Below are positions 16,846-58,832 of a stretch of 64,000 nucleotides of DNA, piece by piece (the stretch's first letter is position 1; each line of letters begins with the position of its first letter). The notes beneath the pieces are model-generated. The model made no database searches, was not told where the DNA came from, and saw only the letters and a list, made by a program, of their open reading frames with translations. The position numbers and the translations under genes are program-made. Location of the stretch: IMG/VR virus record IMGVR_UViG_3300046543_000266, positions 124,001-188,000 of that record; one strand, written 5' to 3'.

Positions 16846-16848
16846 CCA

Positions 16849-16922: not shown

Positions 16923-17261
16923 ATGTATCCATCCAACGCGGTAGTACGTCGGCAGGCGGTCGTAGAAGCCACGCCGGTGACAATCGGTGACGCAGGTGCG
17001 GTCTACAAGCCGGGTCAAGTCATCAACCATTCCATTGTGCTGAACCCTGGACACAGCTTCGACAGTCCGACAGGGTTTTCGGCCGTCTCGATGTCCGTGA
17101 ACAATACGGTATTGTTCGTGTCGACGGTCGACGGTGTCAGCACCGAACAGAAGGTCAACAGTACCCTGTCGATGAACGAAAGTGTGGATTCGTTCAACAT
17201 CCGTAACCTGAGCTATGCCGTGGTCGGGGTCCTACTCACGTTCATCACAAAGGAGGCTTAA
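16923..17261 (+). CDS. Hypothetical beta-rich virion protein
   Basis: Start set at ATG 16923 (uncertain); abuts the next gene. Confidence 0.55.
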   Translation: MYPSNAVVRRQAVVEATPVTIGDAGAVYKPGQVINHSIVLNPGHSFDSPTGFSAVSMSVNNTVLFVSTVDGVSTEQKVNSTLSMNESVDSFNIRNLSYAVVGVLLTFITKEA

Positions 17262-42104: not shown

Positions 42105-42111
42105 GGCAATC

Positions 42112-47924: not shown

Positions 47925-48053
47925 TTACGTGAAGCTGATGTGCAGGTGTTGGAACAGGTGGATTAGCCAGCCGAACTCCGTGTAGACGCCGATCACCAGC
48001 AGAGTTGCCACCCATAATAACAGTAGGCCAATCCAGAATTCACTCTTGTTCAT
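47925..48053 (-). CDS. 42-aa membrane protein, absent from the ORF track
   Basis: MNKSEFWIGLLLLWVATLLVIGVYTEFGWLIHLFQHLHISFT; ATGA-coupled to the GntR gene. Confidence 0.55.
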   Translation of the reverse strand: MNKSEFWIGLLLLWVATLLVIGVYTEFGWLIHLFQHLHISFT

Positions 48054-48325
48054 GGGTATGCAACTCCGGCACGCTCTTGCCATGCAATCACTTCGGGATT
48101 GCGCGTCTTCCAGCGGCCAGCCGGATTTACCTTAGTGCCAGCGCGCGGACGCATGGTTATCACGTTCAGCAGCGTGAGTCGGCTGAGCGCTTCACGCAGA
48201 ACGGTACGGCTCACCCCCAACTGCACAGCCAGATCCAGCTGATCCGGAAGCATACCGCCGGGGCCGACTTTGACTACGAGGTCAACCAACGATTCGAGCG
48301 TCTTATCTACTTTGCTGACTGCCAT
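48050..48325 (-). CDS. GntR-family winged-HTH regulator (stand-alone DNA-binding domain)
   Basis: PGGMLPDQLDLAVQLGVSRTVLREALSRL....ITMRPRAGTKV. Confidence 0.85.
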   Translation of the reverse strand: MAVSKVDKTLESLVDLVVKVGPGGMLPDQLDLAVQLGVSRTVLREALSRLTLLNVITMRPRAGTKVNPAGRWKTRNPEVIAWQERAGVAYP

Positions 48326-48349: not shown

Positions 48350-48823
48350 TTAATAGTCGGCTACTGCGGTGTGATAGCAAACGATGCCGCGTGCGCGCCA
48401 CATATCGACTACGCATTGACGATCGTCGAACGCCATGAACACGTCGGCCAAGTCGAAGCCCGCTTGCTGCACGATCCACGGCTTGTAGTCTTCGTCCGAC
48501 ATCTTCGCAAGACCGTGGAGGCCGGGCGGACGCATCAGCAGTTGATCGTTGGTGATCTTCGGGCCAACGTACTCGTGAATCTGGTGGAGCGTCATACCCC
48601 GATACTCAGGACCGTCGCCACGGCTGGTAACGAACAGCATGTGGAACGCCGGATTGTCGTAGAAGGCGCGGTAGACGTGTGCTCCTTGTGGGATCACCGT
48701 GTCATTGACCGTTGCCTTGATGTAGGCTTCACGATCACCCTTGAAGTAGTGGGCCGTGCGATGGCTGGAGTTGATGAGGCAGCCGTCCAGATCACAGATG
48801 ACCAGCTTGATTGGTGCTTGCAT
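48350..48823 (-). CDS. HAD phosphatase (T4 PNK 3'-phosphatase-like)
   Basis: ICDLDGCL, FVTSR, LLMRP, FDDRQCVVDMWRARG. Confidence 0.85.
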   Translation of the reverse strand: MQAPIKLVICDLDGCLINSSHRTAHYFKGDREAYIKATVNDTVIPQGAHVYRAFYDNPAFHMLFVTSRGDGPEYRGMTLHQIHEYVGPKITNDQLLMRPPGLHGLAKMSDEDYKPWIVQQAGFDLADVFMAFDDRQCVVDMWRARGIVCYHTAVADY

Positions 48824-48856
48824 GAGGGAACCTCGTTGGGTTGGTTGTGGAGATGA

Positions 48857-49309
48857 TCAGTTGGCGGCTGCGGTTTCCGGCGACGCGAGCAGCAGTGCGC
48901 GCTCAGCGATCATGCGTTGCTTGGTGCGACGCTTCTCCAACAGCAGCGCGAAGTAGAAGATCGCGTCGAGAAGCGTTTCGTCCAGCGACTCGGTGGCATT
49001 CGCATCACCTTCAACGTTGAACACGTCGTAGTTCAGCAGTTCGCACTGCGTCTCGAGGCGGTCGATCTTGCGCCAGATCGTGAAGAAGGCACCCGGTCCC
49101 ACACGCTTGCACCACGACGCGCCGTACTCGCTGTCCTTCTTGATGCCGAGGTCGACCAGTTCGTTCATCATCTGGCGGATGTTCTCGAAGTTGGTATGCG
49201 GCAGGTCACGGTCTTGAATCAGCGAGTTGGGGAAAAAGGACACGCCGAAGTCCGGATGCAGCATCGACTGTTGTTTGGGTTGTTGGGGTTGTTTGGGTTG
49301 GTTGCTCAT
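48857..49309 (-). CDS. Nmad1/DUF1599-like all-alpha nucleotide pyrophosphatase
   Basis: KKDSEYGASW.....G.FFTIWRKIDRL...ESLDETLLDAIFY. Confidence 0.7.
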   Translation of the reverse strand: MSNQPKQPQQPKQQSMLHPDFGVSFFPNSLIQDRDLPHTNFENIRQMMNELVDLGIKKDSEYGASWCKRVGPGAFFTIWRKIDRLETQCELLNYDVFNVEGDANATESLDETLLDAIFYFALLLEKRRTKQRMIAERALLLASPETAAAN

Positions 49310-49506
49310 GTTGGTTCCTTGGGTTGGAAGCGGTTCAATACTACGGCGGTTCCGTCAGCGCTAATACGTTGCCACACTAGCGCTTTCTCTTCGACGCTGA
49401 GGAATACCCAATTGTCTACTTCGAATTGGGTACGACCGCAGCCTTTGCATTTGGCGTCGAAGAGCGTGGAACACACGCCGATACATGGGGTGTCGAGTCC
49501 GTGCAT
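49306..49506 (-). CDS. DUF1289-family small Cys-rich (predicted Fe-S) protein
   Basis: TPCIGVCST...KCKGCGRTQFEVDNW...S.EEK..VWQRI; TAATG-coupled start at 49506. Confidence 0.8.
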   Translation of the reverse strand: MHGLDTPCIGVCSTLFDAKCKGCGRTQFEVDNWVFLSVEEKALVWQRISADGTAVVLNRFQPKEPT

Positions 49507-50606
49507 TACTTCATCCGGCGGCCGAGCCACATGATACCGGCGGTCAGCCAGTCGTTGCCGAGCTTGGTGTCGAGGTCAAGCTGGAGGCACTGCTTGTTGT
49601 ACGTGAGCAGAGCCAGACCGCTCGCCGTGTCGCCGGCCTTGTGCATGTTGTAAGCCCGAGCCATCGGCATTGCCACGTAGTCCAGGAACTGGTTCTCGTA
49701 GTCACGGGGGTTCACCTGCTCGGTACACACCGTGACGAAGTCGCGCAGTTCGTCTTCGAATTCATCGCTGTCAGCTTGCAGCGGCAGCGGTGCCACGTCT
49801 TCGTCATACCGACCTGGATAGGCCAGACCACCCTCGACCCCACGGAAGCCGTTGCCCGCGCGCTCGATGAACCGCTTTGTTACGTCGAACTCCGTGTAGA
49901 TGTGCAGGTTGTTGGACACCTGATAGTAGTTGCCAACTTCGACGCCGATCTTGTTCGCCAGATATTCATGGAGGAACGCGAAGTGAACGGCGTTGGCGCC
50001 GTAGGCACCCCAGATCATGTCGTTGCTACGGTTCGTCACCGTGATATTGAGCTTGCCCTGACAGATGTCGACGTAGACCGCGGTATTGCACGGCAGGTCC
50101 TTCGACGTCTGGTTCAGCAGATCCGACGGCTTATACTCGTTGTACATGCCGATGCCGCTTTCGTGCTCGACATCTTCGCCCTTGCCGTCCCACATGCTGA
50201 TCACACAGCGACGGCTGCCCGGATTCTTGCGCAGTTCGGCGATCACGGCGTCCAGCTGATCGTAGCCGAAGTGGTTGCGCCAGCGGAAGCCATACGCGCC
50301 GTTGAGCGTCTCACCGTCGTCGGTGTACTGGAGCATCTGCTTGGCATAGTAGCCGATGGTCGCCACGTCGTTGTTGCCATTCAGCATCCACATGCTTTCG
50401 ATCAGGTGGAGGAACGGGTTGGCGTCGCGAGCCTTGCTGAACGACACACGGTGCATCGGGCTCGACCACATGGTCGTCACCGGACGGGGGAAGCGCAGGA
50501 CCGGACCGTTGCGGCTGTCGGTGACAACACCGTTGGCGAGGATCTGGGGGATGCCAATGCTGAGGGCATGGTCCGGGTTAGCTGCATGAATCACAAACAT
50601 GAACAA
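49506..50606 (-). CDS. Thymidylate-synthase-fold enzyme, probable dUMP hydroxymethylase
   Basis: SRNG, GAYGFRWR, SRRCVISMWD, catalytic DLPCN, NRSNDMIWGAYGANAVHF (Asn at the dUMP-specificity position), NNLHIY. Confidence 0.8.
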   Translation of the reverse strand: MFMFVIHAANPDHALSIGIPQILANGVVTDSRNGPVLRFPRPVTTMWSSPMHRVSFSKARDANPFLHLIESMWMLNGNNDVATIGYYAKQMLQYTDDGETLNGAYGFRWRNHFGYDQLDAVIAELRKNPGSRRCVISMWDGKGEDVEHESGIGMYNEYKPSDLLNQTSKDLPCNTAVYVDICQGKLNITVTNRSNDMIWGAYGANAVHFAFLHEYLANKIGVEVGNYYQVSNNLHIYTEFDVTKRFIERAGNGFRGVEGGLAYPGRYDEDVAPLPLQADSDEFEDELRDFVTVCTEQVNPRDYENQFLDYVAMPMARAYNMHKAGDTASGLALLTYNKQCLQLDLDTKLGNDWLTAGIMWLGRRMK

Positions 50607-50671
50607 CTCCTATGAGAAGGGTTTGATTGGTTGCATACACCAGCTTATTTACGCGCTGGCTTAGAGTTGGA

Positions 50672-51676
50672 TTAGGAGCCTTTGTAGCCGCTGCGAGGCT
50701 CGCCTTCACCGCTGATGACGCGGCAGTATTTGTCGTACTCGCACAGACAGTTGCTGAGGTTCGCTGCGCTCAGGTCGACGAAGCCCGTCTCGAAGCTACC
50801 GGACCACCACTTCGGAGGCACGATCGTCTTCGCCAACTTGTTCATGTCGCGGCGCAGCTTGACCATCGGCTCGTTGAGAGCATTGCCGCGGACGTCGGCT
50901 TTACGACCGCCGCTCATCACTCGGTTCATACCCCGCGTAGTGCCCGGTCCAGGACTAGTGAACGTCTCGATGTCCGTGGCATTCATCAGCCACTTCTGGC
51001 TGTACGTCAGGTCGACGATAACCTGATATGCCATGAACGGTCCCCAACCTTGATACTCACGAAGGGTGGATACGGCCTCTTCCTGGGACTCCTTGAACTT
51101 ACTGCGCAATTCCTTGCGATCCTTCCACAGCGGATCCAGCCCAAAGTACGGGATGTAGTAAGCCTTGCTGTTGTCCGGCGGGTTCGTGCCCTTCGGGAAC
51201 ACGCTGTTGACGATGTAGGCACCGGTGATCAGCTTCTGCTTCTCGTTCTTGATAGCGTTGAACGTGGCGTAGGCTTTCTTGGCACTCCAGCCGTCGACTG
51301 GGAAGCTACCTTCGTCCATCATGCGTTGCAGCGTATCCGGCCAGTTGATGATACGAGCCAGCGCCAGCATGAACCACAGGTCCGGATGGTTCTGGTACGG
51401 CGTGATGATGTTGTCGATTATCCACTTGCTGACCGTGTCGAGCTCACGGTAGATGTTGCAGAAGCGGTAAGCGCGCAGCACTGGATCGTTGGTCCACGGC
51501 TTGGCCTTGCCTACGTGATAGCGCTTCAGGTAGATAGAGTGGCGCTCGATCCAGAACTTCGTGATCGACTCTACCTTGTTTTGATCTTCGGGCTGGAACA
51601 GATAGGGCAGCTTCTTCGGAGCCGCCGCTGGCTGATCAAACAGACTGCCTTGACTGGCGTTTGTTTTGCGCTTCAT
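50672..51676 (-). CDS. aGPT-Pplase1 / 5-hmdU DNA kinase helical-domain family protein
   Basis: ERHSIYLKR...PWTNDPVLRAYRFCNIYRELD, GWGPFMAYQVIVDLTY, GPGTTRG, NCLCEYDKY.R. Start moved to ATG 51676. Confidence 0.8.
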   Translation of the reverse strand: MKRKTNASQGSLFDQPAAAPKKLPYLFQPEDQNKVESITKFWIERHSIYLKRYHVGKAKPWTNDPVLRAYRFCNIYRELDTVSKWIIDNIITPYQNHPDLWFMLALARIINWPDTLQRMMDEGSFPVDGWSAKKAYATFNAIKNEKQKLITGAYIVNSVFPKGTNPPDNSKAYYIPYFGLDPLWKDRKELRSKFKESQEEAVSTLREYQGWGPFMAYQVIVDLTYSQKWLMNATDIETFTSPGPGTTRGMNRVMSGGRKADVRGNALNEPMVKLRRDMNKLAKTIVPPKWWSGSFETGFVDLSAANLSNCLCEYDKYCRVISGEGEPRSGYKGS

Positions 51677-51981
51677 TTGAATAAGCCTCGTGTTCTTTGA
51701 TTGGCAATCGTTGCCAGATACGTACCGTGACAGCGCTTGGGATTGCACCAACATCCGAGACGCTGTCCTTTTAAATCACGGCGGATCTCGTCTCGGGTTG
51801 GTGGCGTTTCTCCGTTAGGTGCTTCGAGCAATCCGTCTAGCCACTTCATGTGCTTGTCGCAGCATTCGGTACGCGTGCCGTGAACGCCGACCACAAAGGG
51901 ATTGCCGTACTTCTGAGGCCTCCCGATGTAGACGTCGTATTCGGATCGCTCGCAGTGGACAACCAACGGATGGTTCGTCAT
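51673..51981 (-). CDS. DUF4326 protein
   Basis: YDVYIGRP..YGNPF...LKGQRLGCWCNPKRCHG; start at ATG 51981. Confidence 0.85.
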   Translation of the reverse strand: MTNHPLVVHCERSEYDVYIGRPQKYGNPFVVGVHGTRTECCDKHMKWLDGLLEAPNGETPPTRDEIRRDLKGQRLGCWCNPKRCHGTYLATIANQRTRGLFK

Positions 51982-52772
51982 AGCAGGAAGTGTTCGGCTT
52001 CGATTGCACGAGTGCGCCAGTACATGCACTGGTCACCGAGCGACATGTTGCGAATGTCGTCTTCGGAATAGTACCCGAGCACCTTGCGCGCCAGCGTGTC
52101 CACGGTATGTGCGTGGGTTGTACCCCTATTTACGCTGCCGACCATTTCGTAGCCGAAGAGCTTGAAATCGCGCTCGTACAGACGGTTGATCAGGCCCAGA
52201 ACATCTTCGTCCAGTTCTTCGATTTTCAGCTTCGGACCAGTCGGATACTTCGTCTGATCCTTCGAGTGGCCGAACTCTTCGGTTTCCACGCCGATCATTT
52301 CACGCACCGTTTTCCAGTCGGCATCAAGGCGCTCGTAGCGGCCGATGAAGTCAGCGTAGCACTTGTTGCCTTGATAGAAGAAGTAATGCTGCGGGCAGAA
52401 GTGCGTGTACTTCCAGTCGAAGCGCACACTTACTTCGTTCAGATTGCGGCGCGCGAATTCGTTGAAGTCGGCATCGGCCGGCAGATTGTGTTGGCGCTTG
52501 TGCTCGGCCCACGAACTGATGAGACGAGTGTACGGATCACGCACGAAGCCGAACTTGAAGTACTCCTCGAAGTAGTGATGGGGCCACACTGCCGGGATGT
52601 CGGCAACGCACACGTGGAACACTTCGATCACACGTTCGAGCTTGGGAATGAACGACTGGTAGTCCAGCTTCAGCGGGTTGCTGTCATACTGGAAGAGGGT
52701 GCGGCGAATCGACGTTCCTGCAACCTTTGGGTTGTGCAAAAACATGAACTTGTTTTGGTCACTGATGATCAT
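51978..52772 (-). CDS. PAPS-dependent sulfotransferase (Sulfotransfer_2 family)
   Basis: 5'-PSB loop FLHNPKVAGTS, 3'-PB motif FVRDPYTRLISSW, HFCPQ, DFIGRYERL. Confidence 0.85.
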   Translation of the reverse strand: MIISDQNKFMFLHNPKVAGTSIRRTLFQYDSNPLKLDYQSFIPKLERVIEVFHVCVADIPAVWPHHYFEEYFKFGFVRDPYTRLISSWAEHKRQHNLPADADFNEFARRNLNEVSVRFDWKYTHFCPQHYFFYQGNKCYADFIGRYERLDADWKTVREMIGVETEEFGHSKDQTKYPTGPKLKIEELDEDVLGLINRLYERDFKLFGYEMVGSVNRGTTHAHTVDTLARKVLGYYSEDDIRNMSLGDQCMYWRTRAIEAEHFLL

Positions 52773-53682
52773 TGAGCAGTCTCTTGAGGTATTCGCGGTC
52801 TTTGTTTTGAAACGCCAGTTCGGCCTTCAGTAGTAATTTACCCTTCTCGCGGAACTTGGCGCGCTTTTCTTTGTCTTTGAACAGGCCCGGTGCGTTCATG
52901 AAGTCGACGCGCAGGAAGGACGCAACGTGCTGAGCTTGCTTGCCGCGCTTGATCAAACCTGGGAACATCACCATCTGGCGCAGGAACGAGTCGTGGACAT
53001 GCTGGACCTTGCGCTCGCTGCCTGCACCACCTTGATCTTTCGGGTCGAAGGTGGTGTTCCACAGCATGTGATAGTCGACGACCGAACGATAGCCGTTGCA
53101 CAGCACCGCCAGATTGTGAACTGTGTCGATGCCCCACAGATCGCGCGTTTCCTTCTTGTCGATGCAGTGCAGCAGGATGTTCACATCGTAGCCCGCGACG
53201 TTGGTACACTTGTGATTCTTGCGCTCCAGTCCCCAACGTTCGATGATGTTCTTGTGCATGAAGTAAGCGCCAGCGCCGACCAGCGCGTTACCCTTGCGGA
53301 ACAGTTGCGGAGCCCTCTTCAGGAACCACTCGTCCGCAGCGCTGATGTCTTTGGTTGCGCCCACGTACTTGTCACCACGACGACCGTAGAACAGCATGTC
53401 GTCCTCTATCACCATTGCGAACTTGGCCCCCTGCTTGCGATGATGATCGAACACCGAGTAGCGCTTGTTCGGCAGCAGGATGTCGTCCTTGGTGCGCAAG
53501 AAGTCCACGTGCTTGGCGTAGGCTTCCTTCTTGTGGGCCGCATGCTCTGAGGCCGGGCACACCACTGTGATGTGCTTCTGCACTTCAGGGGACAGGTAGG
53601 ACAGCGTCTTCTGCCGTCCTACTCGCCCCTTGGTCAGCAGGTAGATGTGGTAGTCTTTATCCATATGATACGTAGGTTCCAA
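52759..53682 (-). CDS. TAGT/JGT-like GT-A glycosyltransferase, paralog A (divergent)
   Basis: IYLLTKGR, KR..V, AMVIEDDM metal-binding motif, C-terminal QGG; the usual ED motif reads GID. Confidence 0.6.
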   Translation of the reverse strand: MEPTYHMDKDYHIYLLTKGRVGRQKTLSYLSPEVQKHITVVCPASEHAAHKKEAYAKHVDFLRTKDDILLPNKRYSVFDHHRKQGAKFAMVIEDDMLFYGRRGDKYVGATKDISAADEWFLKRAPQLFRKGNALVGAGAYFMHKNIIERWGLERKNHKCTNVAGYDVNILLHCIDKKETRDLWGIDTVHNLAVLCNGYRSVVDYHMLWNTTFDPKDQGGAGSERKVQHVHDSFLRQMVMFPGLIKRGKQAQHVASFLRVDFMNAPGLFKDKEKRAKFREKGKLLLKAELAFQNKDREYLKRLLNDHQ

Positions 53683-54175
53683 CCCACCCTTTATGGTGTT
53701 CTTTTATACCGCCGCAGACGGCCTTCATGCAAGAGTAGTCTAGACCGTGAATGCGGCATAGACCCCTGAGATTGTTTCCAATGTAGCTCACCCAACGTGG
53801 AGAAGTCACGTGGTAGCCGCGCGCCAGCTTGTTGCCAATCTCCACATCACCGCCGTTGAGGGCGCGCTCCGACAAGTTCTGAGCGGTTGTGATGAACCGG
53901 CAGTTACCCCAGACGTAATCACCGACGTCACCGAGGCGACCCATCTGGAATTCGGATACTGCCTTTCCGATCTGATCGGGGTGTTTTATACCGGCACGTT
54001 TCGCGAGCTTCATGTACTGGCGGAAGGTCAGCAAACAGACGCAACCACGACGACTAGCATTTCCGCGTAGATCGCGCCATTTCCTTCGCCATTGAAACCA
54101 GTAGCTCTGATCGAAGCTGAGCTTCTGCAGCACACCACAAGCTTCCTCTTCAGTTAGAACACGATCCCGAGTCAT
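53657..54175 (-). CDS. HNH-like (beta-beta-alpha-Me) free-standing endonuclease
   Basis: NASRRG...LLTF, MGRLGDVGDYVWGNCRFITTAQN; C-terminal NUMOD-like HHKGW. Confidence 0.55.
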   Translation of the reverse strand: MTRDRVLTEEEACGVLQKLSFDQSYWFQWRRKWRDLRGNASRRGCVCLLTFRQYMKLAKRAGIKHPDQIGKAVSEFQMGRLGDVGDYVWGNCRFITTAQNLSERALNGGDVEIGNKLARGYHVTSPRWVSYIGNNLRGLCRIHGLDYSCMKAVCGGIKEHHKGWVGTYVSYG

Positions 54176-54942
54176 TAGACCAGCCCTCCGATTTTAGCAG
54201 CACCCCTCCAACTGATGCGAGTGTTGGAATCCGGGTGTTGGGCCGATGGCGGCTTTTCCTTCACGACATCGGGGTGCAGCTTGAGCAGCTTCTGCAGCGC
54301 AGCCTTCGCCATATCACGGGTACGTTCACCTTCTAGCCCACCTGGAGCGTCGGCCTTACGCTGCGCCACCGCCATGTCGTACGTGAGGGCGATTCGCGTT
54401 CCACCCTTGAGTAGTTGGAGCGTGTAGTCTATGTCCTCGTACGGAAATAAACGATCCCACACGATCTTCTTTACGGTGCCGCGGGACATGCCGAAGGCGA
54501 ATCCTAGATGGCTGTTCTCTTTGATACCACCCTTCGGCGCGAAAGCCTTGGTCCCGAGCCCGACGCACTTGTAGCGCGAGCACAGGTCCGGAAGCACCTT
54601 GGTCCAGAAGCCCTTGGTCACTTCGGGAACCGTCGACGCCACGACGTGCTTGTCCTGCTCCTTATCGAAGGCATACAGGTACAGATCGTCGTCGAACATG
54701 AACGCGTACTTGTGCGGGCTGTTCTCCATGATCCACTGGCGCTTGGCACTCAGCGTCTGGATGGACTTCGGCTGCGCCAGCACGTTGACCTTCGGGTAGT
54801 TGGCCTTGAGGATAACGACTTCATCCTTGGGGCATACCAGAGTGACGTGACCGTGCATTCCCTTAGGCAACCGCTCGACCGTCAGCTGGTTGGCAGTACG
54901 GCCCCGCGTTGGGATGTAGATATGATAGTTGATCTTGGACAT
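54175..54942 (-). CDS. TAGT/JGT-like GT-A glycosyltransferase, paralog B
   Basis: IYIPTRGR, LSAKRQWI, FMFDDDL, YEDIDYTLQLL..G, PGG. Confidence 0.75.
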   Translation of the reverse strand: MSKINYHIYIPTRGRTANQLTVERLPKGMHGHVTLVCPKDEVVILKANYPKVNVLAQPKSIQTLSAKRQWIMENSPHKYAFMFDDDLYLYAFDKEQDKHVVASTVPEVTKGFWTKVLPDLCSRYKCVGLGTKAFAPKGGIKENSHLGFAFGMSRGTVKKIVWDRLFPYEDIDYTLQLLKGGTRIALTYDMAVAQRKADAPGGLEGERTRDMAKAALQKLLKLHPDVVKEKPPSAQHPDSNTRISWRGAAKIGGLV

Positions 54943-55676
54943 CAGAAGCGAGCCTCGTTTCTGCGTTGGAATTCCGCCAGATGCTCAGGCGTACCCAGAT
55001 TGGTGAACTGACGGGTCTCGAAGTACCGCAGCGGCAGTCGTGTGATCCCGTTGATGACGGCGCTCAGTGGCAGTTCGGCATAAGGCTTTCTGTTGCGCTC
55101 GGCTTCAAGGAACGCATCCGCCATGTCGTCCACGTTACGGAACCAGTAGCAGCCAGTGTTGATGTAGTCGGAGATCCGCAGCTTCTCGGACAGACCATGG
55201 AACACGGCAGTCTTACGCCACGCCGAATGATACTTGGCTGGATTGTTCAGGAAAGAGTACTCTTCCGACCCGCTCTTGTCTTCGTAGGCAATGACGCCGG
55301 AGCTGCCCTCGATGACTGCTTCGGTCATGGTGTACTTGAGGTCGACGTGTGCCGAGCAGTCACAGTCGAAGATGATGACCGGTCCTTCACGCGGTGGATC
55401 GCACATCAACGCCAGAGCCATCGCGCTGAATGCCGGACCCGGCGAAACGTCTTCGAGATAGTGGACGGCCTTGAAGGTATCCCCGTACTGTGCGAGCAGC
55501 TCCTCGTCCTTGCGCAGGATCAGGATCTCGACGTCCGACGGTTCCAGCCCATACGAGTCGATAACCCATCGGTACATCGGGACGCCCGGAAGTACTTCGA
55601 TGAACGGCTTGCTGACCGGGAATCCCTGCTCCCGGAAGCGTGAGCCCATTCCGGCGGCGGACATTAGATAGCGCAT
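54942..55676 (-). CDS. Sugar-phosphate nucleotidyltransferase (NTP_transferase fold)
   Basis: SAAGMGSRF...GFPVSKPFIEV, IFDCD, SEKLRISDYINTGCYWF, LGTPE. Confidence 0.8.
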   Translation of the reverse strand: MRYLMSAAGMGSRFREQGFPVSKPFIEVLPGVPMYRWVIDSYGLEPSDVEILILRKDEELLAQYGDTFKAVHYLEDVSPGPAFSAMALALMCDPPREGPVIIFDCDCSAHVDLKYTMTEAVIEGSSGVIAYEDKSGSEEYSFLNNPAKYHSAWRKTAVFHGLSEKLRISDYINTGCYWFRNVDDMADAFLEAERNRKPYAELPLSAVINGITRLPLRYFETRQFTNLGTPEHLAEFQRRNEARF

Positions 55677-57202
55677 GATTGCTGTTCCATGAGTTGGTAT
55701 ATTTCTTGGCCCTTCTTGAACAGAGCCAGTTGTCGTTGCAGCGAATCGCTGTGTAGCGGCAGCATTGAGAAGAACAGCAGCGCAGTCATCGCCAGCACTT
55801 CTTGGAAGTCGATACCGAAGCGCTCCCGAACTACGACGCTGAAGTAACTAATGACCTCACGGTTCAGCGGAGGCGGGTTGATTGCCGAGACACTGTAGTG
55901 CCCGGCGATAATCGAGTCGTAGCCAACCATCGAGTGCAGCAGCTTTGCCAACTCGTAGCGGACGTCGCCGTATATGGAGCGCTCGTCGAATCCGTTGAGG
56001 CCGCGCGGGTCAAACACCTTGATGCTATTAGTGCGATGGTCATACGCGATGTTGCTGAAGCACAGGTCACCATGAACTACCGAGATACGGTCAGGGCGAT
56101 CGGGTATCTGTGCGATGCAGTGCTCGGACAATGCCGTAAGCTCAGGCACAATCTCCGAGAAGGTGTCGGACTGGCCGCTGGACTGACCACTGAGTTGTAG
56201 CTGCTGGATGCGCTGGCGAGTCTTACCTTCGATGAGCTCACGGAACGCCGCCGCTTCATGCAGGACGGTCTCTGAGTCGATATGGTGTCCCGGGTCACCA
56301 CCAATGAAGTCGAGGCACTTGTCGATGATGGTGTGCCACACACCAAACTCTTGATTGCCGAACACGTACAGTTCAGCCAGCGTCGGCAGCGGCAGGTACT
56401 CGATCTCGTAGGATCCGTAGCAGTCGTACGACAGCAGGGCCGGAGTGTACTTACGCAGCTTGACTGGGAGGTTGCTGTACCAATCGAACTCAGCGTGGAT
56501 CTTGGCTGGAGTACCACTCTTACTCACCACGTTGTCTTCGATGCGAAGTTGGTTGAAATGCCGCGACGTCAGGAAGTTCTGCTTGGACAGGAAGTAGGTA
56601 GCAGCGTGTCCGAAGTCAAACCAGTCGACGCCGTCCGTATAGTCCTGATAGGTTACGGCGACTTCGTCGTGAATCCAATCCAGGGCTTCACTGATATCGT
56701 CGTCAGGTGCTATCACACGCGCTACCGTGTTGAGCGGAGCCATGAAGTATCCGATGAACACAGCATTGCGGCCGTTATCCAAGCGTATATCCAACCAGTT
56801 GAAGTTACCCGGACGGGTCGCAGCCACCCCGATGCACGGAGTGGTCGCCCACTTGCTGATCAGTGTATCGCCCCACAGAACGTGTAGTTCCACACCCTCA
56901 CAGTTTCGAGCACCGTTCAAGTGGTTCACTATCCTGGTCACCGCATAGTACAGAACGTGCGACAACGGACGTGGGTGCTTGGACGAGTACTCACTTAACA
57001 TGGTCACGCGATCATCGCACGGCGGCATCGGGAAATCTTCCGGATGTGTGACAAATACCTTGTCGAAGTCTGCACCCATCTTCAGCTGATGTTGGATCAA
57101 CGACTTGCCAGCTACCGGAATGCGTGAGGCGGGCAGCTTACCGAACATGAACTGAAGCTCGGGGTTGCACAGCGCTGAAGACAGGATAAGCAGGACCTTC
57201 AT
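55664..57202 (-). CDS. Nucleotidyltransferase-like / APH-choline-kinase-like phosphotransferase fusion (sugar kinase candidate)
   Basis: FGKLP..RIPVAGK, WFDFGH..TY, VVHGDLCFSNI, FDPRG, GDVRYELAKL.HS. Same architecture as so-called capsular biosynthesis proteins. Start at ATG 57202. Confidence 0.75.
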   Translation of the reverse strand: MKVLLILSSALCNPELQFMFGKLPASRIPVAGKSLIQHQLKMGADFDKVFVTHPEDFPMPPCDDRVTMLSEYSSKHPRPLSHVLYYAVTRIVNHLNGARNCEGVELHVLWGDTLISKWATTPCIGVAATRPGNFNWLDIRLDNGRNAVFIGYFMAPLNTVARVIAPDDDISEALDWIHDEVAVTYQDYTDGVDWFDFGHAATYFLSKQNFLTSRHFNQLRIEDNVVSKSGTPAKIHAEFDWYSNLPVKLRKYTPALLSYDCYGSYEIEYLPLPTLAELYVFGNQEFGVWHTIIDKCLDFIGGDPGHHIDSETVLHEAAAFRELIEGKTRQRIQQLQLSGQSSGQSDTFSEIVPELTALSEHCIAQIPDRPDRISVVHGDLCFSNIAYDHRTNSIKVFDPRGLNGFDERSIYGDVRYELAKLLHSMVGYDSIIAGHYSVSAINPPPLNREVISYFSVVVRERFGIDFQEVLAMTALLFFSMLPLHSDSLQRQLALFKKGQEIYQLMEQQSCAI

Positions 57203-57237
57203 TATGACCTCGGATTGTTGTGGGCGTACTACCCTAT

Positions 57238-58116
57238 TTACTTCTGGCTGGCAGCATAGCATTTCTGCCAGTAGATGATGACTTCCTTGCGGGAGATGCT
57301 CTCTTTGTACTTACGGTCCACCACCTTGACGAACGGCTCGTGCGCACGCGCCAGCTTGACCGCAGCGATGTCCGAGCGCTTGATCGTCCGCTCTTCGAAT
57401 GCCCCACCCTTTGCCCCGTAGGACAGCGGGTTGACTACGAAGTTGTTCATGATTAGATTGGGGATGCCGCGCTTGAGCAGATGCAAGGTCACGTTGAAGT
57501 CTTCGCGGAACTTGATCTCGTCGAAGCGGATGTCGTTGTCGAGTAGCGTGCGGCGGTGATGACCCATCGCGTGCATGGCGCGACCGGCTTCCATGGTTTC
57601 CTTGCGCTGCCGATTGTTGTTCTGCCGTGAAGCAATGCAGGTATGCCGATACTCACGTTCGAGCATGGCATCACGGATGAAGTCGAAGCGGCGGATCTTC
57701 TGCTCGTCGGTGAAGCCGTCCTTGAACAGGAACAGCACACCCTTCTTCTTGTACTCAGGCAGCACATCCCACTGCACCTTCTTGGGGTCGAAGGCTCGAT
57801 ACTTCTTGTTGCAGCGCCGGAAGAAGTACATGTCGTCGTCCATCTGGAAGATGTTGTCCGACTTGACGTTCTCGATGATCCACTGGCGCTTCTTGGCGAT
57901 GCCGTCCACCGTCGGATCGTCGATAGCGTACACCAGATCGTGTTTATACTTCTTCTTTAAGGCCCGCGCATCTTCGAGGGTCGAAGTAATGAGCAGTACC
58001 TTGGCACGCAGTTCTTCGGGGATGCCCAAGAACGTCACTTGGCGATCCACCCGTTGATGCGTTGGTATGACCAGCTGAAAGTCTTTATCAGCCACGAGGA
58101 GTCTGTTCTTGAACAT
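57238..58116 (-). CDS. TAGT/JGT-like GT-A glycosyltransferase, paralog C
   Basis: VIPTHQR, GIAKKRQWI, FQMDDDM, FREDFNVTLHLL..G, KGG. Confidence 0.75.
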   Translation of the reverse strand: MFKNRLLVADKDFQLVIPTHQRVDRQVTFLGIPEELRAKVLLITSTLEDARALKKKYKHDLVYAIDDPTVDGIAKKRQWIIENVKSDNIFQMDDDMYFFRRCNKKYRAFDPKKVQWDVLPEYKKKGVLFLFKDGFTDEQKIRRFDFIRDAMLEREYRHTCIASRQNNNRQRKETMEAGRAMHAMGHHRRTLLDNDIRFDEIKFREDFNVTLHLLKRGIPNLIMNNFVVNPLSYGAKGGAFEERTIKRSDIAAVKLARAHEPFVKVVDRKYKESISRKEVIIYWQKCYAASQK

Positions 58117-58127
58117 GCCCGAGCCTG

Positions 58128-58832
58128 TTAGTAGGTGAGAACGAACTTGCGGAATCCGTCAGGTGTGTTCTCGATGGAAGGGTAGCCAGTGGCCTCGACG
58201 TTGTACTTGGTGACGCCGTGCTCGACCGTGGTGGCGGGAACCATCAGACCACGCAGTTCGAAGTCGTCGAACAGATACTCTTCCATCGTGGCTGCGTTGA
58301 TAACGCGCCACTGATTGGTGTGGCCGTCCGAATGCGTGTTGTACCGGATGTAGTACTTCTTGTGACCGGTCGTCACCACCTTGGCGATCTGACGTGCTTC
58401 CTTGTCGAACTCTTCGGCGCTCTCCAGATAGTTGCCGATCTGATAGTCCACCTCATCGTACTTGGGCGGCACGTACATCTTGTTCGTGTCCTCGAAGCGG
58501 CCCTTGTCGATGGTGTTCATCCACACCTTGAACACGTCGTCTGTGTGATCGAGGAACTGTTCTTGGAACGCGTTGCGCGTGGTTGCCAGCGGACACACGA
58601 AGTCGACGATAACCCAATGGCCTTGGAAGTGCAGCATCCGAGCCAACTGACCGAGAGTGGTTGCTTGCTTGACGCGGTCCAGGTTGGAGAAGCCCAGATG
58701 CGACGTGATGGTGCTACGCGCCCAGTCAGCGTTGACGTGGATGGCGTTCAGCTTCTGTTGGAGAACCTTTGCCAACGTGGTCTTGCCGCTGCCGGGCAAA
58801 CCCTGAATGAAGATGACTTTGTTTTGGCTCAT
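58128..58832 (-). CDS. Adenylylsulfate (APS) kinase-like P-loop kinase
   Basis: QGLPGSGKTTLA, NAD.AR, LGFS..DR..Q, VIVDFVCP...R, GRFEDTN; C-terminal extension of unknown fold. Confidence 0.7.
   Translation of the reverse strand: MSQNKVIFIQGLPGSGKTTLAKVLQQKLNAIHVNADWARSTITSHLGFSNLDRVKQATTLGQLARMLHFQGHWVIVDFVCPLATTRNAFQEQFLDHTDDVFKVWMNTIDKGRFEDTNKMYVPPKYDEVDYQIGNYLESAEEFDKEARQIAKVVTTGHKKYYIRYNTHSDGHTNQWRVINAATMEEYLFDDFELRGLMVPATTVEHGVTKYNVEATGYPSIENTPDGFRKFVLTY

What the first reader, a model, noticed from the sequence alone, without database searches (positions are those of the whole stretch)
48350..58832. Candidate undescribed DNA hypermodification pathway: hydroxymethyl-uracil, then glycosylation, then sulfation
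Seen: about 10.5 kb of co-oriented, mostly overlap-coupled genes: APS-kinase-like, GT-C, sugar-kinase fusion, nucleotidyltransferase, GT-B, HNH, GT-A, sulfotransferase, DUF4326, aGPT-Pplase1/HMUDK-helical, TS-fold enzyme, DUF1289, Nmad1 and HAD phosphatase. Established: TS-fold dUMP hydroxymethylases with aGPT-Pplase/HMUDK proteins underlie thymidine hypermodification (phiW-14, ViI, M6), and TAGT/JGT-type enzymes glycosylate hydroxymethyl-pyrimidines (trypanosome base J). Inference: the locus supplies the base handle, purges dTTP/dUTP, makes its own NDP-sugar and PAPS, and builds a sulfated (oligo)glycosyl base. I know of no characterised phage base like this. Alternative: the glycan/sulfate genes decorate virion proteins or the host surface.
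Basis: partly seen in the sequence, partly recalled or inferred. Interest (0 to 1): 0.92.

Follow-up and report, generated by a model that had tools for sequence, protein, structure and literature searches.

The report
Phage gene cluster for sulfated, glycosylated thymine
A jumbo phage related to Ralstonia phage RSL1 carries a conserved gene set that most likely replaces thymine with hydroxymethyluracil, attaches sugars to it on the DNA and then sulfates the sugars, which would be the first sulfated base known in any DNA.

Summary
The gene run is real: 14 co-oriented, mostly overlapping minus-strand ORFs at 48350-58832, inside the replication/recombination module of a 217-kb phiRSL1-like phage contig.

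**Corrected labels**
- All three glycosyltransferases are TAGT (JGT-like GT-A) paralogs, not GT-C/GT-B/GT-A.
- "Nmad1" is unconfirmed.
- The HNH gene is an insertion absent from RSL1.

**Confirmed parts**
- A thymidylate-synthase homolog with the dUMP-hydroxymethylase signature.
- aGPT-Pplase clade 1.
- A Sulfotransfer_2 enzyme with intact PAPS motifs.
- A divergent APS-kinase-like protein.
- A KfoE/AfhE-like kinase plus nucleotidyltransferase fusion, with a KfoH-like nucleotidyltransferase.

**Comparative evidence**
- At least 15 divergent phage contigs keep hydroxymethylase, Pplase1, glycosyltransferases, sulfotransferase and (in all but one) the APS-kinase-like gene together, in shuffled order.
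- Among 80 viral Pplase1 loci, 36 carry glycosyltransferases and 24 carry the canonical 5-hmdU kinase/Pplase2. None carries both.
- All 10 sulfotransferase loci fall in the glycosyltransferase set.

**Verdict:** a glycosylating branch of thymidine hypermodification with a sulfation add-on. It is a new variant of a known kind. No chemistry has been measured, and I found no report of sulfated DNA. RSL1 is cultured, so LC-MS can test this directly.

The parts
58128..58832 (-). APS-kinase-like P-loop kinase (234 aa), the proposed PAPS supplier. Belongs to a phage-specific clade with NADWAR in place of LDGDxxR and an extra ~90-aa C-terminal domain.
   Evidence: Pfam APS_kinase 3.9e-15, 56.6 bits against a cut-off of 21.1. 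Best PDB matches are all APS kinases. NCBIfam apsK scores 52 bits, far below the equivalog cut-off of 138.7. It does not hit PF18748, which the true 5-hmdU kinases M6 gp54 and SP10 gp186 do hit. Motifs GLPGSGKTT, NADWAR and GFSNLDR are present.
57238..58116 (-). TAGT paralog B (292 aa), a JGT-like GT-A DNA glycosyltransferase.
   Evidence: Pfam TAGT 2.4e-11 and PHROG 842 6e-48. Motifs R22, DDD93-95 and ED-F205-207. Orthologs in RSL1 ORF237 and L003. Net basic and soluble.
55664..57262 (-). KfoE/AfhE-like two-domain protein with an N-terminal nucleotidyltransferase-like fold and a C-terminal APH-type kinase. Proposed sugar-phosphate 1-kinase for making an NDP-sugar donor. The true start is probably about 20 codons downstream.
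   Evidence: 33% identity over 95% of its length to the 546-aa protein at the kfoE position of a capsule locus whose gene order matches my recollection of E. coli K4 region 2. AlphaFold pLDDT 90. Foldseek matches 1wvc, MurU 4y7t and RmlA for the N half, and 3dxq and choline kinases for the C half. HGDLCFSN and DPRG are present, with no GxGTR in the N domain. The 512-aa database version is P0109.
54942..55676 (-). KfoH-like small nucleotidyltransferase (244 aa). Proposed to convert sugar-1-P to NDP-sugar.
   Evidence: GMGSRF..KP signature. Weak matches to GMPPA, NF041313 UDPGP and the 241-aa protein that follows the KfoE-like gene in E. coli (E 3e-4). RSL1 ORF235 is annotated as a nucleotidyl transferase.
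54175..54942 (-). TAGT paralog A (255 aa), the best family match. Candidate base-directed glycosyltransferase.
   Evidence: Pfam TAGT 8.4e-38 over the full profile. Motifs R15, DDD84-86 and EDIDY169-173. 78% identical to RSL1 ORF234.
53657..54175 (-). HNH-like ORF (172 aa). Probably a homing-endonuclease insertion and not a pathway step.
   Evidence: PHROG 2081 HNH endonuclease 1.5e-7, no Pfam hit. Absent from RSL1, where ORF233 and ORF234 abut.
52759..53682 (-). TAGT paralog C (307 aa), with divergent motifs (EDD, and ID instead of ED).
   Evidence: Pfam TAGT 2.7e-10 and PHROG 842 2.6e-41. The motif deviation is conserved in the RSL1 and L003 orthologs.
51978..52772 (-). PAPS-dependent sulfotransferase (264 aa), the proposed glycan O-sulfotransferase.
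   Evidence: Pfam Sulfotransfer_2 6e-24. Invariant 5'-PSB motif PKVAGTS and 3'-PB motif RDPYTRLIS. Nearest cellular relative (47%) lies in a Pantoea O-antigen locus. In phages it is linked to Pplase1, the TS homolog and glycosyltransferases.
51673..52029 (-). DUF4326 protein of unknown role. Recurs in some related clusters.
   Evidence: Pfam DUF4326 1e-21. Also present in L010, L011 and L034/L102.
50672..51754 (-). aGPT-Pplase clade 1 / HMUDK_hel protein with no kinase domain. A DNA-glycosylase-like fold, and the conserved partner of hmU pathways. The likely start is at 51676.
   Evidence: Pfam HMUDK_hel 3.8e-48. 38-40% identical to M6-type gp55. No P-loop. Model pLDDT 86. Foldseek top hit is the PaMx11 gp46 5-PmdU glycinyltransferase 8z2n, followed by OGG glycosylases. 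Invariant D222 and C312-E313-K316.
49506..50606 (-). Thymidylate-synthase homolog, predicted dUMP hydroxymethylase that makes 5-hmdUMP.
   Evidence: Pfam 1.3e-21. 46% identical to the M6 homolog, 29% to SP10 and 27% to SH-Ab 15599 dUMP HMase. Signature in E. coli ThyA numbering: C146=C173, L143->D170, D169=D196 retained, N177=N205.
49306..49530 (-). DUF1289 small cysteine-rich protein of unknown role.
   Evidence: Pfam DUF1289 4e-13.
48857..49309 (-).
   Evidence: 70% identical to the L005 homolog, 50% to L011 and 56% to RSL1 ORF229, always next to the TS homolog. No Pfam or PDB match. Not similar to the SH-Ab 15599 gp18 dTTPase/dUTPase.
48350..48823 (-). HAD phosphatase of the T4-PNKP 3'-phosphatase type. 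Substrate unknown; candidates are dTMP/dUMP, the distal phosphate of a sugar bisphosphate, or PAP.
   Evidence: Pfam HAD_PNKP 7e-12 and PHROG 415 4e-26. Recurs in RSL1, L005, L011, L034 and L029/L031.
48050..48325 (-). A possible regulator.
   Evidence: Pfam GntR 3.9e-12.

Best explanation
The cluster is a phage pathway that hypermodifies thymine in the phage's own DNA.

**Step 1 (inferred from signature and homology).** The TS homolog converts dUMP to 5-hydroxymethyl-dUMP. This is phosphorylated and incorporated in place of dT.

**Step 2 (inferred from family and context).** On the DNA, JGT-like GT-A glycosyltransferases of the TAGT family O-glycosylate the hydroxymethyl group. With three paralogs present, they probably extend it to a short glycan.

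**Step 3 (inferred).** The phage makes at least one sugar donor itself. A KfoE/AfhE-like kinase with a nucleotidyltransferase-like domain, together with a KfoH-like nucleotidyltransferase, supplies it. Related phages swap this module for UDP-galactopyranose mutase.

**Step 4 (inferred).** A PAPS-dependent Sulfotransfer_2 enzyme sulfates a sugar hydroxyl. PAPS comes from host APS through the phage APS-kinase-like protein.

**Unassigned parts.** aGPT-Pplase1 has a DNA-glycosylase-like, base-flipping fold. It is a constant partner of hmU pathways, and its exact step is unknown. The canonical 5-hmdU DNA kinase and Pplase2 are absent, so this is a glycosylating branch of thymidine hypermodification, not the phospho/amino-transfer branch.

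**Likely purpose.** Shielding the DNA from host nucleases. This is an inference from what other hypermodifications do.
For: **Base handle**
- The TS homolog is 46% identical to the M6 homolog and shares its C-terminal extension.
- It carries D at the L143 position, D at D169 and N at N177. According to PMC13326640 this marks hydroxymethylation of dUMP and rules out the 5-hydroxy synthase type.

**Glycosyltransferases**
- Three TAGT hits are above the Pfam threshold.
- They carry the R...DDD...EDY/F motif that bioRxiv 10.1101/2023.12.21.572611 describes for phage GT-A enzymes. That preprint shows these enzymes glycosylate DNA and resemble trypanosome JGT.
- The TAGTs and Pplase1 are net basic, while the metabolic enzymes are net acidic.

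**Sulfation**
- PAPS-binding motifs are invariant.
- The partner kinase matches only APS kinases.
- Sulfotransferase plus APS-kinase pairs also occur in bacteria.
- The sulfotransferase lies next to or within one small ORF of UDP-galactopyranose mutase in most mutase-carrying phage loci, and shares a Pantoea O-antigen operon with it. This points to a sugar acceptor.

**Linkage**
- Of 13 IMG/VR loci with a sulfotransferase at least 33% identical, 10 carry Pplase1, the TS homolog, TAGT and the APS kinase within 10 kb, in shuffled gene order. None of 65 more distant loci do.
- Four further contigs from other collections agree on Pplase1, the TS homolog, glycosyltransferases and the sulfotransferase. 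One of them, L007, shows no recognisable TAGT or APS-kinase gene in its listing and carries two GT4-type glycosyltransferases instead.
- Of 80 Pplase1 loci, 36 have glycosyltransferases and 24 have 5-HMUDK/Pplase2, with no overlap (Fisher p 1e-8). All 10 sulfotransferase loci fall within the glycosyltransferase set (p 1.5e-4).

**Genomic setting**
- The cluster sits between sigma factor/SSB/UvsX/terminase and peptidase/primase.
- It contains no membrane protein, transporter or polymerase.
Against: - No chemical measurement exists for this phage or for RSL1.
- The nearest cellular relatives of the sulfotransferase and of the KfoE/KfoH-like pair work on surface polysaccharides.
- Three viral loci keep the sulfotransferase without any hmU or glycosyltransferase gene within 10 kb. 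Two of them also keep the mutase (L029, L031, L032).
- The APS-kinase-like protein has Asn-Ala-Asp where APS kinases have Asp-Gly-Asp. It scores far below the NCBIfam equivalog cut-off.
- The sulfotransferase is net acidic and shows no sign of DNA binding. It could act on a sugar nucleotide or on something unrelated.
- TAGT-C has a deviant third motif.
- HPLC found no modified nucleosides in the related Burkholderia jumbo phage Matilda. Whether that phage has the cluster is unknown.
- The locus counts include near-duplicate contigs and contig-end truncations.
Confidence: 0.55

Rival explanations
1. DNA is glycosylated on hmU as above, but the sulfotransferase and APS-kinase pair does not act on DNA-linked sugar. 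It would sulfate a sugar nucleotide before transfer, or a small molecule, or a host or virion component. The final base would then be a plain glycosyl-hmU, or would carry a sugar that was sulfated before transfer.
For: - The sulfotransferase is net acidic, unlike the basic TAGTs and Pplase1.
- L029/L031 keep mutase plus sulfotransferase without nearby hmU or glycosyltransferase genes.
- The closest homologs act in O-antigen synthesis.
- 26 Pplase1+TAGT loci function without any sulfotransferase.
Against: - All 10 sulfotransferase-bearing Pplase1 loci also have glycosyltransferases. The sulfotransferase clade at least 33% identical is found almost only inside these clusters.
- If sulfation occurs on the donor sugar and the sugar is then transferred, the DNA still ends up sulfated.
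Confidence: 0.17
2. Sulfate is a leaving group and not the final decoration. The sulfotransferase would take the role of the missing 5-hmdU DNA kinase and make 5-sulfooxymethyl-dU. Pplase1 would then displace the sulfate with a nucleophile that is later glycosylated.
For: - The canonical kinase and Pplase2 are absent from the window, from related loci and from the complete RSL1 genome.
- The sulfotransferase lies beside Pplase1 in RSL1, L003 and L007. That is the position the kinase occupies in M6 and SP10.
- Pplase1 keeps an invariant Cys/Glu/Lys/Asp set and resembles the 5-PmdU transferase fold.
Against: - 26 loci have Pplase1 and TAGT with neither kinase nor sulfotransferase, so glycosylation does not need sulfate activation.
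- In mutase-type loci the sulfotransferase sits beside the mutase, not beside Pplase1.
- The family and its nearest homologs are carbohydrate sulfotransferases.
Confidence: 0.08
3. The glycosyltransferases, sugar-activation genes and sulfation genes decorate virion proteins or the host cell surface, and only the TS homolog and Pplase1 concern DNA.
For: The cellular homologs of the sulfotransferase, the KfoE/KfoH-like pair and the mutase all work on capsule, O-antigen or LPS core.
Against: - The glycosyltransferases are TAGT, a family tied to DNA base modification.
- There is tight, order-shuffled linkage to the hydroxymethylase and Pplase1 in at least 15 contigs, inside replication modules.
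- Glycosyltransferases and the kinase/Pplase2 pair are mutually exclusive, as expected for alternative fates of the same hmU.
- There is no lipid-carrier glycosyltransferase, flippase, polymerase or exporter, and all proteins are soluble.
Confidence: 0.07
4. The 'APS kinase' and 'sulfotransferase' use a PAPS-like donor that is not sulfate. The Campylobacter pathway is the model, recalled from memory: there an APS-kinase homolog (Cj1415) 3'-phosphorylates CDP-phosphoramidate. The group added would then be a phosphoryl-type group, not sulfate.
For: - The kinase is divergent, with NAD in place of DGD, an extra C-terminal domain, and a score well below equivalog cut-offs.
- A kinase and two nucleotidyltransferase-like proteins are in the same cluster.
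Against: - The transferase has canonical sulfotransferase PAPS motifs and clusters with bona fide sulfotransferase family members.
- The KfoE/KfoH-like pair and the sulfotransferase/kinase pair occur independently of each other in bacteria and in phage loci.
- The GFSxxDR APS-binding segment is retained.
Confidence: 0.06

Closest known systems
Thymidine hypermodification pathways of phages M6, ViI, PhiW-14, SP10, PaMx11 and SH-Ab 15599 (PMC8989533, PMC13458397)
   Same: - A TS-homolog dUMP hydroxymethylase supplies 5hmdU.
- An aGPT-Pplase clade 1 gene lies next to it, in the same order (Pplase1 then hydroxymethylase) as in SH-Ab 15599 and M6.
- The cluster lies among replication genes.
   Different: - No 5-hmdU DNA kinase (PF18748) and no Pplase2 amino-acid/polyamine transferase.
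- Glycosyltransferases, sugar-nucleotide genes and a sulfotransferase take their place.
- The two gene sets never co-occur in 80 loci.
Base J of kinetoplastids (JBP dioxygenase plus JGT glucosyltransferase)
   Same: hmU in DNA is O-glycosylated by a GT-A enzyme. Phage TAGT-type enzymes are structural relatives of JGT.
   Different: - Here hmU would be made before replication by a TS homolog, not by oxidising T in DNA.
- There are three glycosyltransferases instead of one.
- The phage supplies its own sugar donor.
- Sulfation is added.
Phage 5hmC glycan hypermodification by TET/5mYOX-associated GT-A and GT-B enzymes, and T-even glucosyl-hmC (PMC8256090; bioRxiv 10.1101/2023.12.21.572611)
   Same: - The same glycosyltransferase family and motif.
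- Stepwise glycan building on a hydroxymethylpyrimidine in DNA.
- That preprint already noted GT-A genes near thymidylate-synthase homologs and APH phosphotransferases in metagenomes.
   Different: - The predicted base is uracil-derived.
- No methyltransferase or dioxygenase is present.
- That preprint never mentions sulfotransferases (0 occurrences of 'sulf').
Arabinosyl-5-hydroxycytosine pathway of RB69, DLP3 and HY126 (AfhE/AfhF; PMC13326640)
   Same: - A TS homolog makes the handle.
- The phage makes its own NDP-sugar with a protein of the same architecture, a nucleotidyltransferase N domain plus a kinase C domain. The C-terminal half has weak tblastn hits to Mosigvirus/Dhakavirus/Marfavirus-type phages.
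- Several glycosyltransferases act in series.
   Different: - Different base (5-hydroxy-C) and a different TS signature (D169N, N177D).
- The window protein is closer to bacterial KfoE-like proteins (33%), lacks the GxGTR motif in its N domain, and has a separate small nucleotidyltransferase.
- That pathway has no sulfation.
SP-15 and YerA41 glycosylated thymidine derivatives (PMC13697223)
   Same: - Sugars, including an anionic phosphoglucuronate in SP-15, hang from C5 of a thymine-derived base.
- The related phage RP13 has Pplase1 without a detectable 5-hmdU kinase.
   Different: - Those bases use a dihydroxypentyl-type carbon linker.
- The anionic group is phosphate or uronate, not sulfate.
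Bacterial glycan sulfation, such as sulfated O-antigens, and sulfotransferase plus APS-kinase gene pairs
   Same: The same sulfotransferase family (47% identity to a Pantoea O-antigen enzyme) and the same pairing with an APS kinase.
   Different: - The target there is a lipid-linked surface glycan with export machinery.
- Here the genes sit in a DNA-modification cluster with no export genes.

Membership tests
5hmdU-derived thymidine hypermodification system (Lee/Weigele type) | TS-homolog dUMP hydroxymethylase (catalytic Cys; Asn at the N177 position; acidic residue at the L143 position; Asp kept at D169) | tested here: met
   C173, D170, D196 and N205 are invariant in 7 homologs including M6 and SP10.
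5hmdU-derived thymidine hypermodification system (Lee/Weigele type) | 5-hmdU DNA kinase (P-loop, PF18748 HMUDK_HMUD1) | tested here: not met
   The controls M6 gp54 and SP10 gp186 hit PF18748. The window P-loop protein hits APS_kinase only. tblastn finds no kinase homolog in the window, in related loci or in the full RSL1 genome. BLAST sensitivity is limited.
5hmdU-derived thymidine hypermodification system (Lee/Weigele type) | aGPT-Pplase clade 2 (amino-acid/polyamine:DNA transferase) | tested here: not met
   No tblastn hit to M6 gp51 in the window, related loci or RSL1. Absent from all 36 glycosyltransferase-bearing Pplase1 loci.
5hmdU-derived thymidine hypermodification system (Lee/Weigele type) | aGPT-Pplase clade 1 / HMUDK_hel protein adjacent to the hydroxymethylase | tested here: met
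   Pfam 3.8e-48; 38-40% identity to M6-type gp55; the fold resembles 8z2n and OGG glycosylases.
5hmdU-derived thymidine hypermodification system (Lee/Weigele type) | Thymidine replaced by a modified nucleoside in virion DNA | not testable with these tools
   Needs LC-MS of virion DNA.
TAGT / JGT-like GT-A DNA glycosyltransferases | Match to PF20691 above the gathering score | tested here: met
   44.4, 130.8 and 40.9 bits against a cut-off of 27.5.
TAGT / JGT-like GT-A DNA glycosyltransferases | Active-site motif R...DDD...EDY/F | tested here: met
   Complete in paralogs A and B. Paralog C has EDD and ID instead.
TAGT / JGT-like GT-A DNA glycosyltransferases | Genomic association with an enzyme that makes a hydroxymethylpyrimidine | tested here: met
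   TS-homolog hydroxymethylase within 8 kb here. 33 of the 36 glycosyltransferase-bearing Pplase1 loci show TAGT, all with a TS homolog.
TAGT / JGT-like GT-A DNA glycosyltransferases | Sugar transfer to hmU (or to a sugar) on DNA | not testable with these tools
   Needs an enzyme assay on 5hmdU-DNA.
PAPS-dependent sulfotransferase (Sulfotransfer_2) | Family match plus 5'-phosphosulfate and 3'-phosphate binding motifs | tested here: met
   85.9 bits against a cut-off of 22. PKVAGTS and RDPYTRLIS are invariant across 10 homologs.
PAPS-dependent sulfotransferase (Sulfotransfer_2) | Identity of the acceptor | not testable with these tools
   Only context is available: the mutase link and O-antigen homologs suggest a sugar.
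APS kinase (CysC) | Family match, Walker A motif and APS-binding GF(S/T)xxDR segment | tested here: met
   Pfam 56.6 bits against 21.1. All PDB hits are APS kinases. GLPGSGKTT and GFSNLDR are present.
APS kinase (CysC) | Asp-Gly-Asp motif and equivalog-level score | tested here: not met
   NADWAR in all phage members. TIGR00455 scores 52 bits against a cut-off of 138.7.
AfhE/KfoE-type kinase plus nucleotidyltransferase sugar-activating enzyme | Two-domain architecture (NDP-sugar pyrophosphorylase fold plus APH-type kinase fold) with intact kinase catalytic loop | tested here: met
   Model pLDDT 90. Foldseek hits both fold classes. HGDLCFSN and DPRG are invariant in 40 homologs.
AfhE/KfoE-type kinase plus nucleotidyltransferase sugar-activating enzyme | Catalytic GxGTR-type signature in the nucleotidyltransferase domain | tested here: not met
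   The motif is absent from the N domain of the whole KfoE-like family. It is present (GMGSRF) in the separate 244-aa protein.
AfhE/KfoE-type kinase plus nucleotidyltransferase sugar-activating enzyme | Partner HAD phosphatase that removes the distal phosphate | tested here: inconclusive
   A HAD_PNKP gene is in the cluster. It is not similar to the small HAD-like protein beside bacterial KfoE-like genes, and it also occurs in mutase-type loci that lack the KfoE-like gene.
GT-B: two Rossmann domains, no DxD motif. | tested here: not met
   The proteins are 255-307 aa and soluble, with DxD motifs, and all hit TAGT.
   No Pfam hit at E up to 10 for the protein or three homologs, and no PDB hit with a profile.

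The most novel reading that the evidence does not exclude
Virion DNA of this phage and of cultured phage phiRSL1 contains a sulfated (oligo)glycosyl-5-hydroxymethyluracil. This would be the first sulfate ester found on a natural DNA base. The sugars may be furanoses: a KfoE-type donor in this clade and galactofuranose in the sister clade. The wider finding is a glycosylating branch of thymidine hypermodification in which aGPT-Pplase1 works with JGT-like glycosyltransferases instead of the 5-hmdU kinase and Pplase2.
Probability: 0.5. Interest if true: 0.9.

Novelty: new variant of a known kind. Interest (0 to 1): 0.82.

Why it matters
**Chemistry.** Sulfate esters are common on glycans, lipids, steroids and proteins. 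In the literature I could search they have not been reported on DNA. A sulfated glycosyl base would add a new chemical class to natural nucleic acids and roughly double the negative charge at each modified T. That has consequences for DNA packaging (RSL1 encodes a functional homospermidine synthase), for nuclease and CRISPR evasion, and for nanopore and other sequencing.

**Pathway logic.** The survey separates two mutually exclusive fates of phage hmU, glycosylation and phospho/amino transfer. Both keep the uncharacterised aGPT-Pplase1. This narrows what that protein can be doing.

**Side lead.** The work links the bacterial KfoE/KfoH-like pair to the AfhE type of sugar activation. By the review's account, kfoE is needed for fructosylation of the E. 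coli K4 capsule.

**Testability.** RSL1 is in culture, so the central claim can be tested with one nucleoside LC-MS experiment.

Tried and rejected
1. **Is the P-loop protein the missing 5-hmdU DNA kinase?** Rejected. Known kinases hit PF18748, whereas this protein hits only APS_kinase, and BLAST shares only the Walker A motif.
2. **Is a canonical kinase or Pplase2 hiding elsewhere?** None was found in the window, the related loci or the whole RSL1 genome. RSL1 was fetched in pieces for this.
3. **Is the TS homolog a dCMP hydroxymethylase or 5-hydroxy synthase?** The best PDB hit was the CMP hydroxymethylase MilA. Rejected on signature residues.
4. **Is the 150-aa protein an Nmad1 or dTTPase?** No family, PDB or gp18 similarity.
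5. **Megablast and tblastn of the cluster, sulfotransferase and TAGT-A against 50,697 phage records.** Only RSL1 matched.
6. **Locus search with the 12-sequence TAGT alignment.** It failed because no block was conserved enough. I repeated it with three closer sequences.
7. **Literature searches for sulfated DNA or RSL1 DNA modification.** Nothing found. One search was too broad to be useful. Iyer et al. 2013 (NAR) is not held.
8. **Sequence search of PDB with Pplase1, the 532-aa protein and TAGT-A.** No hits.
9. **tRNA scan of the window.** None found.
10. A structure model of a TAGT paralog and of the APS-kinase C-terminal domain.

Full report
**What is there**

The window is part of IMG/VR contig IMGVR_UViG_3300046543_000266 (217,605 bp). 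Its only relative among 50,697 phage records is Ralstonia jumbo phage phiRSL1, which matches at 73% nucleotide identity over parts of the cluster and is syntenic at ORF230-238.

Between 48350 and 58832 there are 14 minus-strand ORFs, mostly overlapping or a few bases apart. On one side lie the terminase, Holliday-junction resolvase, UvsX-like recombinase, SSB and sigma factor. On the other lie a peptidase and the primase. The cluster therefore sits in the replication/recombination part of the genome.

**Gene by gene, in transcription order**

| Coordinates | Assignment |
|---|---|
| 58128-58832 | APS-kinase-like |
| 57238-58116 | TAGT paralog B |
| 55664-57262 | 532-aa two-domain protein |
| 54942-55676 | small nucleotidyltransferase-like protein |
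| 54175-54942 | TAGT paralog A |
| 53657-54175 | HNH-like ORF, absent from RSL1, so probably an insertion |
| 52759-53682 | TAGT paralog C |
| 51978-52772 | Sulfotransfer_2 |
| 51673-52029 | DUF4326 |
| 50672-51754 | HMUDK_hel / aGPT-Pplase clade 1 |
| 49506-50606 | TS homolog |
| 49306-49530 | DUF1289 |
| 48857-49309 | conserved 150-aa protein of unknown family |
| 48350-48823 | HAD_PNKP phosphatase |

All three glycosyltransferases belong to the one family TAGT, and no cluster protein has a membrane-grade hydrophobic segment. 'Nmad1' could not be confirmed.

**The base handle**

- The TS homolog is 55% identical to RSL1 ORF230 and 46% to the M6 homolog. It is 29% identical to the SP10 homolog and 27% to the SH-Ab 15599 dUMP hydroxymethylase. 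It shares their C-terminal extension.
- PMC13326640 gives diagnostic positions in E. coli ThyA numbering. N177 versus D selects dUMP versus dCMP. An acidic residue at L143 goes with hydroxymethylation. D169N marks 5-hydroxycytosine synthases.
- The window protein has C173 (=C146), D170 (=L143), D196 (=D169) and N205 (=N177). All are invariant across seven homologs. That is the dUMP-hydroxymethylase pattern.
- RSL1 also encodes a dCMP deaminase and NUDIX enzymes elsewhere in its genome.

**What is missing**

- In known thymidine hypermodification, a P-loop 5-hmdU DNA kinase phosphorylates hmU, and Pplase2 then replaces the phosphate with an amine (PMC8989533).
- As controls, M6 gp54 and SP10 gp186 hit Pfam PF18748. 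The window's P-loop protein does not, and it matches only APS kinases.
- tblastn with M6 gp54, the SP10 kinase domain and M6 gp51 found nothing in the window or in seven related loci. It also found nothing in the complete RSL1 genome.
- The Pplase1 protein itself has no P-loop.
- Its AlphaFold model (pLDDT 86) most resembles the PaMx11 5-PmdU glycinyltransferase, weakly (E 8e-3), and then 8-oxoguanine DNA glycosylases.
- It keeps invariant Asp, Cys, Glu and Lys residues. It therefore looks like an enzyme that handles a flipped-out DNA base, but its reaction is unknown.

**The glycosylation module**

- The TAGT paralogs fall into three orthologous groups shared with RSL1 and contig L003.
- Paralogs A and B carry the full R...DDD...EDY/F motif. 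Paralog C has EDD and ID.
- bioRxiv 10.1101/2023.12.21.572611 reports that phage GT-A enzymes with this motif put diverse glycans on 5hmC in DNA. It also reports that their closest structural relative is the trypanosome base-J glucosyltransferase, and that such genes occur near thymidylate-synthase homologs and APH phosphotransferases in metagenomes.
- The three TAGTs and Pplase1 are net basic, as DNA-binding enzymes tend to be. The metabolic enzymes are net acidic.

**The sugar-donor module**

- The 532-aa protein modelled at pLDDT 90. Its N half matches sugar-1-phosphate nucleotidylyltransferases such as 1wvc, RmlA and MurU. Its C half matches choline/ethanolamine-kinase and APH folds.
- The kinase motifs HGDLCFSN and DPRG are invariant in 40 homologs. 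The N domain lacks the GxGTR signature, whereas the neighbouring 244-aa protein has GMGSRF.
- Its cellular homologs (33% identity, full length) are 'capsular biosynthesis proteins'. They are flanked by a small HAD-like gene and a ~240-aa gene, and are found in an E. coli group-2 capsule locus and in a Photobacterium LPS-core locus.
- The gene order of that E. coli locus matches my recollection of K4 region 2, which would place this homolog at kfoE. That identification is from memory of the published order, not a database label. A review states that kfoE deletion abolishes fructosylation of K4 chondroitin (PMC8858990).
- The architecture equals that of phage HY126 AfhE and RB69 gp52:53. Those proteins phosphorylate arabinose-5-P at C1 and then make UDP-arabinose, with a HAD phosphatase acting in between (PMC13326640).
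- The window protein has weak tblastn hits to exactly those T4-like phage groups.
- I infer a phage-made NDP-sugar. Its identity is open, and fructofuranose is only a lead.
- Sister clusters replace this module with UDP-galactopyranose mutase.

**The sulfation module**

- The sulfotransferase keeps the 5'-phosphosulfate motif PKVAGTS and the 3'-phosphate motif RDPYTRLIS. Both are invariant in ten homologs.
- Its nearest cellular relative (47%) lies in a Pantoea O-antigen operon with the mutase, glycosyltransferases and an ABC transporter.
- A more distant bacterial homolog is followed directly by an APS kinase.
- The phage kinase aligns with solved APS kinases through the P-loop and the GFSxxDR segment. 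All phage members, however, have NADWAR instead of LDGDxxR and an added C-terminal domain, and the score is far below the equivalog cut-off.
- PAPS synthesis is therefore likely but not secure.

**Comparative test 1: starting from the sulfotransferase**

- Contigs from Logan, JGI, ENA and NCBI with sulfotransferases 32-54% identical all carry Pplase1, the TS homolog and glycosyltransferases within replication modules. The glycosyltransferases are one to three TAGTs and/or GT4 enzymes.
- Most also carry the APS-kinase-like gene. L007 and L010 show no Pfam APS_kinase gene, and L007 shows no TAGT.
- In IMG/VR, 10 of 13 loci with a sulfotransferase at least 33% identical carry Pplase1, the TS homolog, TAGT and the kinase within 10 kb. 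None of 65 loci with more distant sulfotransferases do.
- Gene order differs from locus to locus, so the linkage is not just inherited synteny.
- The exceptions are L029/L031 (mutase, sulfotransferase and HAD only, on the same primase-to-SSB backbone) and L032.

**Comparative test 2: starting from Pplase1**

| Content of the 80 best IMG/VR loci | Number |
|---|---|
| Glycosyltransferase present | 36 |
| 5-hmdU kinase and/or Pplase2 present | 24 |
| Both | 0 |
| Neither (many are short) | 20 |

- The exclusion of glycosyltransferases and kinase/Pplase2 gives Fisher p 1e-8.
- All 10 sulfotransferase loci lie within the glycosyltransferase group (p 1.5e-4).
- Glycosylation and phospho/amino transfer are therefore alternative fates of hmU, both accompanied by Pplase1. 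Sulfation is an add-on in about a quarter of the glycosylating clusters.
- This also argues against sulfate serving as the leaving group, since 26 glycosyltransferase clusters have neither kinase nor sulfotransferase.
- Caveats: retrieval is pattern-based and capped at 80 loci. Some contigs are near-duplicates or truncated. Presence was called by tblastn at 1e-4.

**Literature**

- Full-text searches found no report of a sulfotransferase in DNA hypermodification, of sulfated DNA, or of RSL1 DNA modification.
- Neither the GT-A mining preprint nor the 2021 pathway paper mentions sulfotransferases.
- Glycosylated thymidine derivatives are known in SP-15 and YerA41. The related RP13 has Pplase1 without a detectable kinase (PMC13697223).
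- Iyer et al. 2013, which defined TAGT and aGPT-Pplase, is not in the held library. I could not check whether it mentions RSL1.

**Verdict**

My estimates:
- About 0.8 that this is a DNA hmU-glycosylation cluster.
- About 0.5-0.55 that the mature base carries sulfate.

It is a new variant of a known kind of system. Its chemistry would be unprecedented if confirmed, and RSL1, a cultured phage, is available to test it.

Noticed in passing
window 53657-54175 (-): An HNH-like ORF sits between TAGT-A and TAGT-C, overlapping both. RSL1 has no gene there, because ORF233 and ORF234 abut. It is probably a homing-endonuclease insertion, possibly degenerate, since only the NxRxxTxxQN part of the motif is visible.
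   Followed up: partly
loci L117, L122, L126, L128, L129, L134, L136 and others (26 of the 80): Many viral contigs have aGPT-Pplase1, a TS homolog and TAGT with no sulfotransferase, no 5-hmdU kinase and no Pplase2. These look like plain glycosyl-hmU (base-J-like) phages, and they are more common than the sulfated type.
   Followed up: partly
L029 and L031 (IMG/VR contigs 3300031964_000005 and 3300029993_000005), about 8.7-12.5 kb: Only UDP-galactopyranose mutase, the sulfotransferase and the HAD phosphatase remain at the syntenic position. There is no glycosyltransferase, Pplase1 or TS homolog within 10 kb. This is either a split cluster or a remnant, and it is unexplained.
   Followed up: partly
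L013 9001-11290 (E. coli) and L015 7630-10333 (Photobacterium): The bacterial triad of a small HAD-like gene, a KfoE-like two-domain protein and a ~240-aa nucleotidyltransferase-like protein has the same logic as the phage AfhE/AfhF arabinose pathway. KfoE, usually called a fructosyltransferase, may instead make an activated sugar donor.
   Followed up: partly
window 58128-58832 (-), residues ~145-234; alignment A2: The phage APS-kinase-like proteins share an extra C-terminal domain (YYIRYNTHSDG...WRVI...) that is absent from cellular APS kinases and from the L003 homolog. Its function is unknown.
   Followed up: no
L026 10786-11205 and 11607-12368: One related contig seems to carry a second sulfotransferase-like segment and a fourth TAGT-like gene. 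This suggests further elaboration of the glycan.
   Followed up: no
RSL1 genome: L019 8761-10203 (ORF110) and L018 24276-25397 (ORF052): RSL1 encodes a homospermidine synthase, shown to be functional in PMC9992855, and a glutathionylspermidine synthase homolog. Extra polyamine could help neutralise DNA that carries additional sulfate charges. This is speculation.
   Followed up: no
window 48050-48325 (-): A 91-aa GntR-type winged-helix protein lies directly downstream of the cluster. It is not obviously present at that position in RSL1.
   Followed up: no
window 1-17657 (+) versus 17899-63965 (-): There is a strand switch near 17.7 kb. The left arm holds large plus-strand ORFs that I did not annotate. 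The portal (35668-37572) and large terminase (39843-42122) lie on the minus strand, upstream of the recombination genes. There are no tRNA genes in the window.
   Followed up: partly
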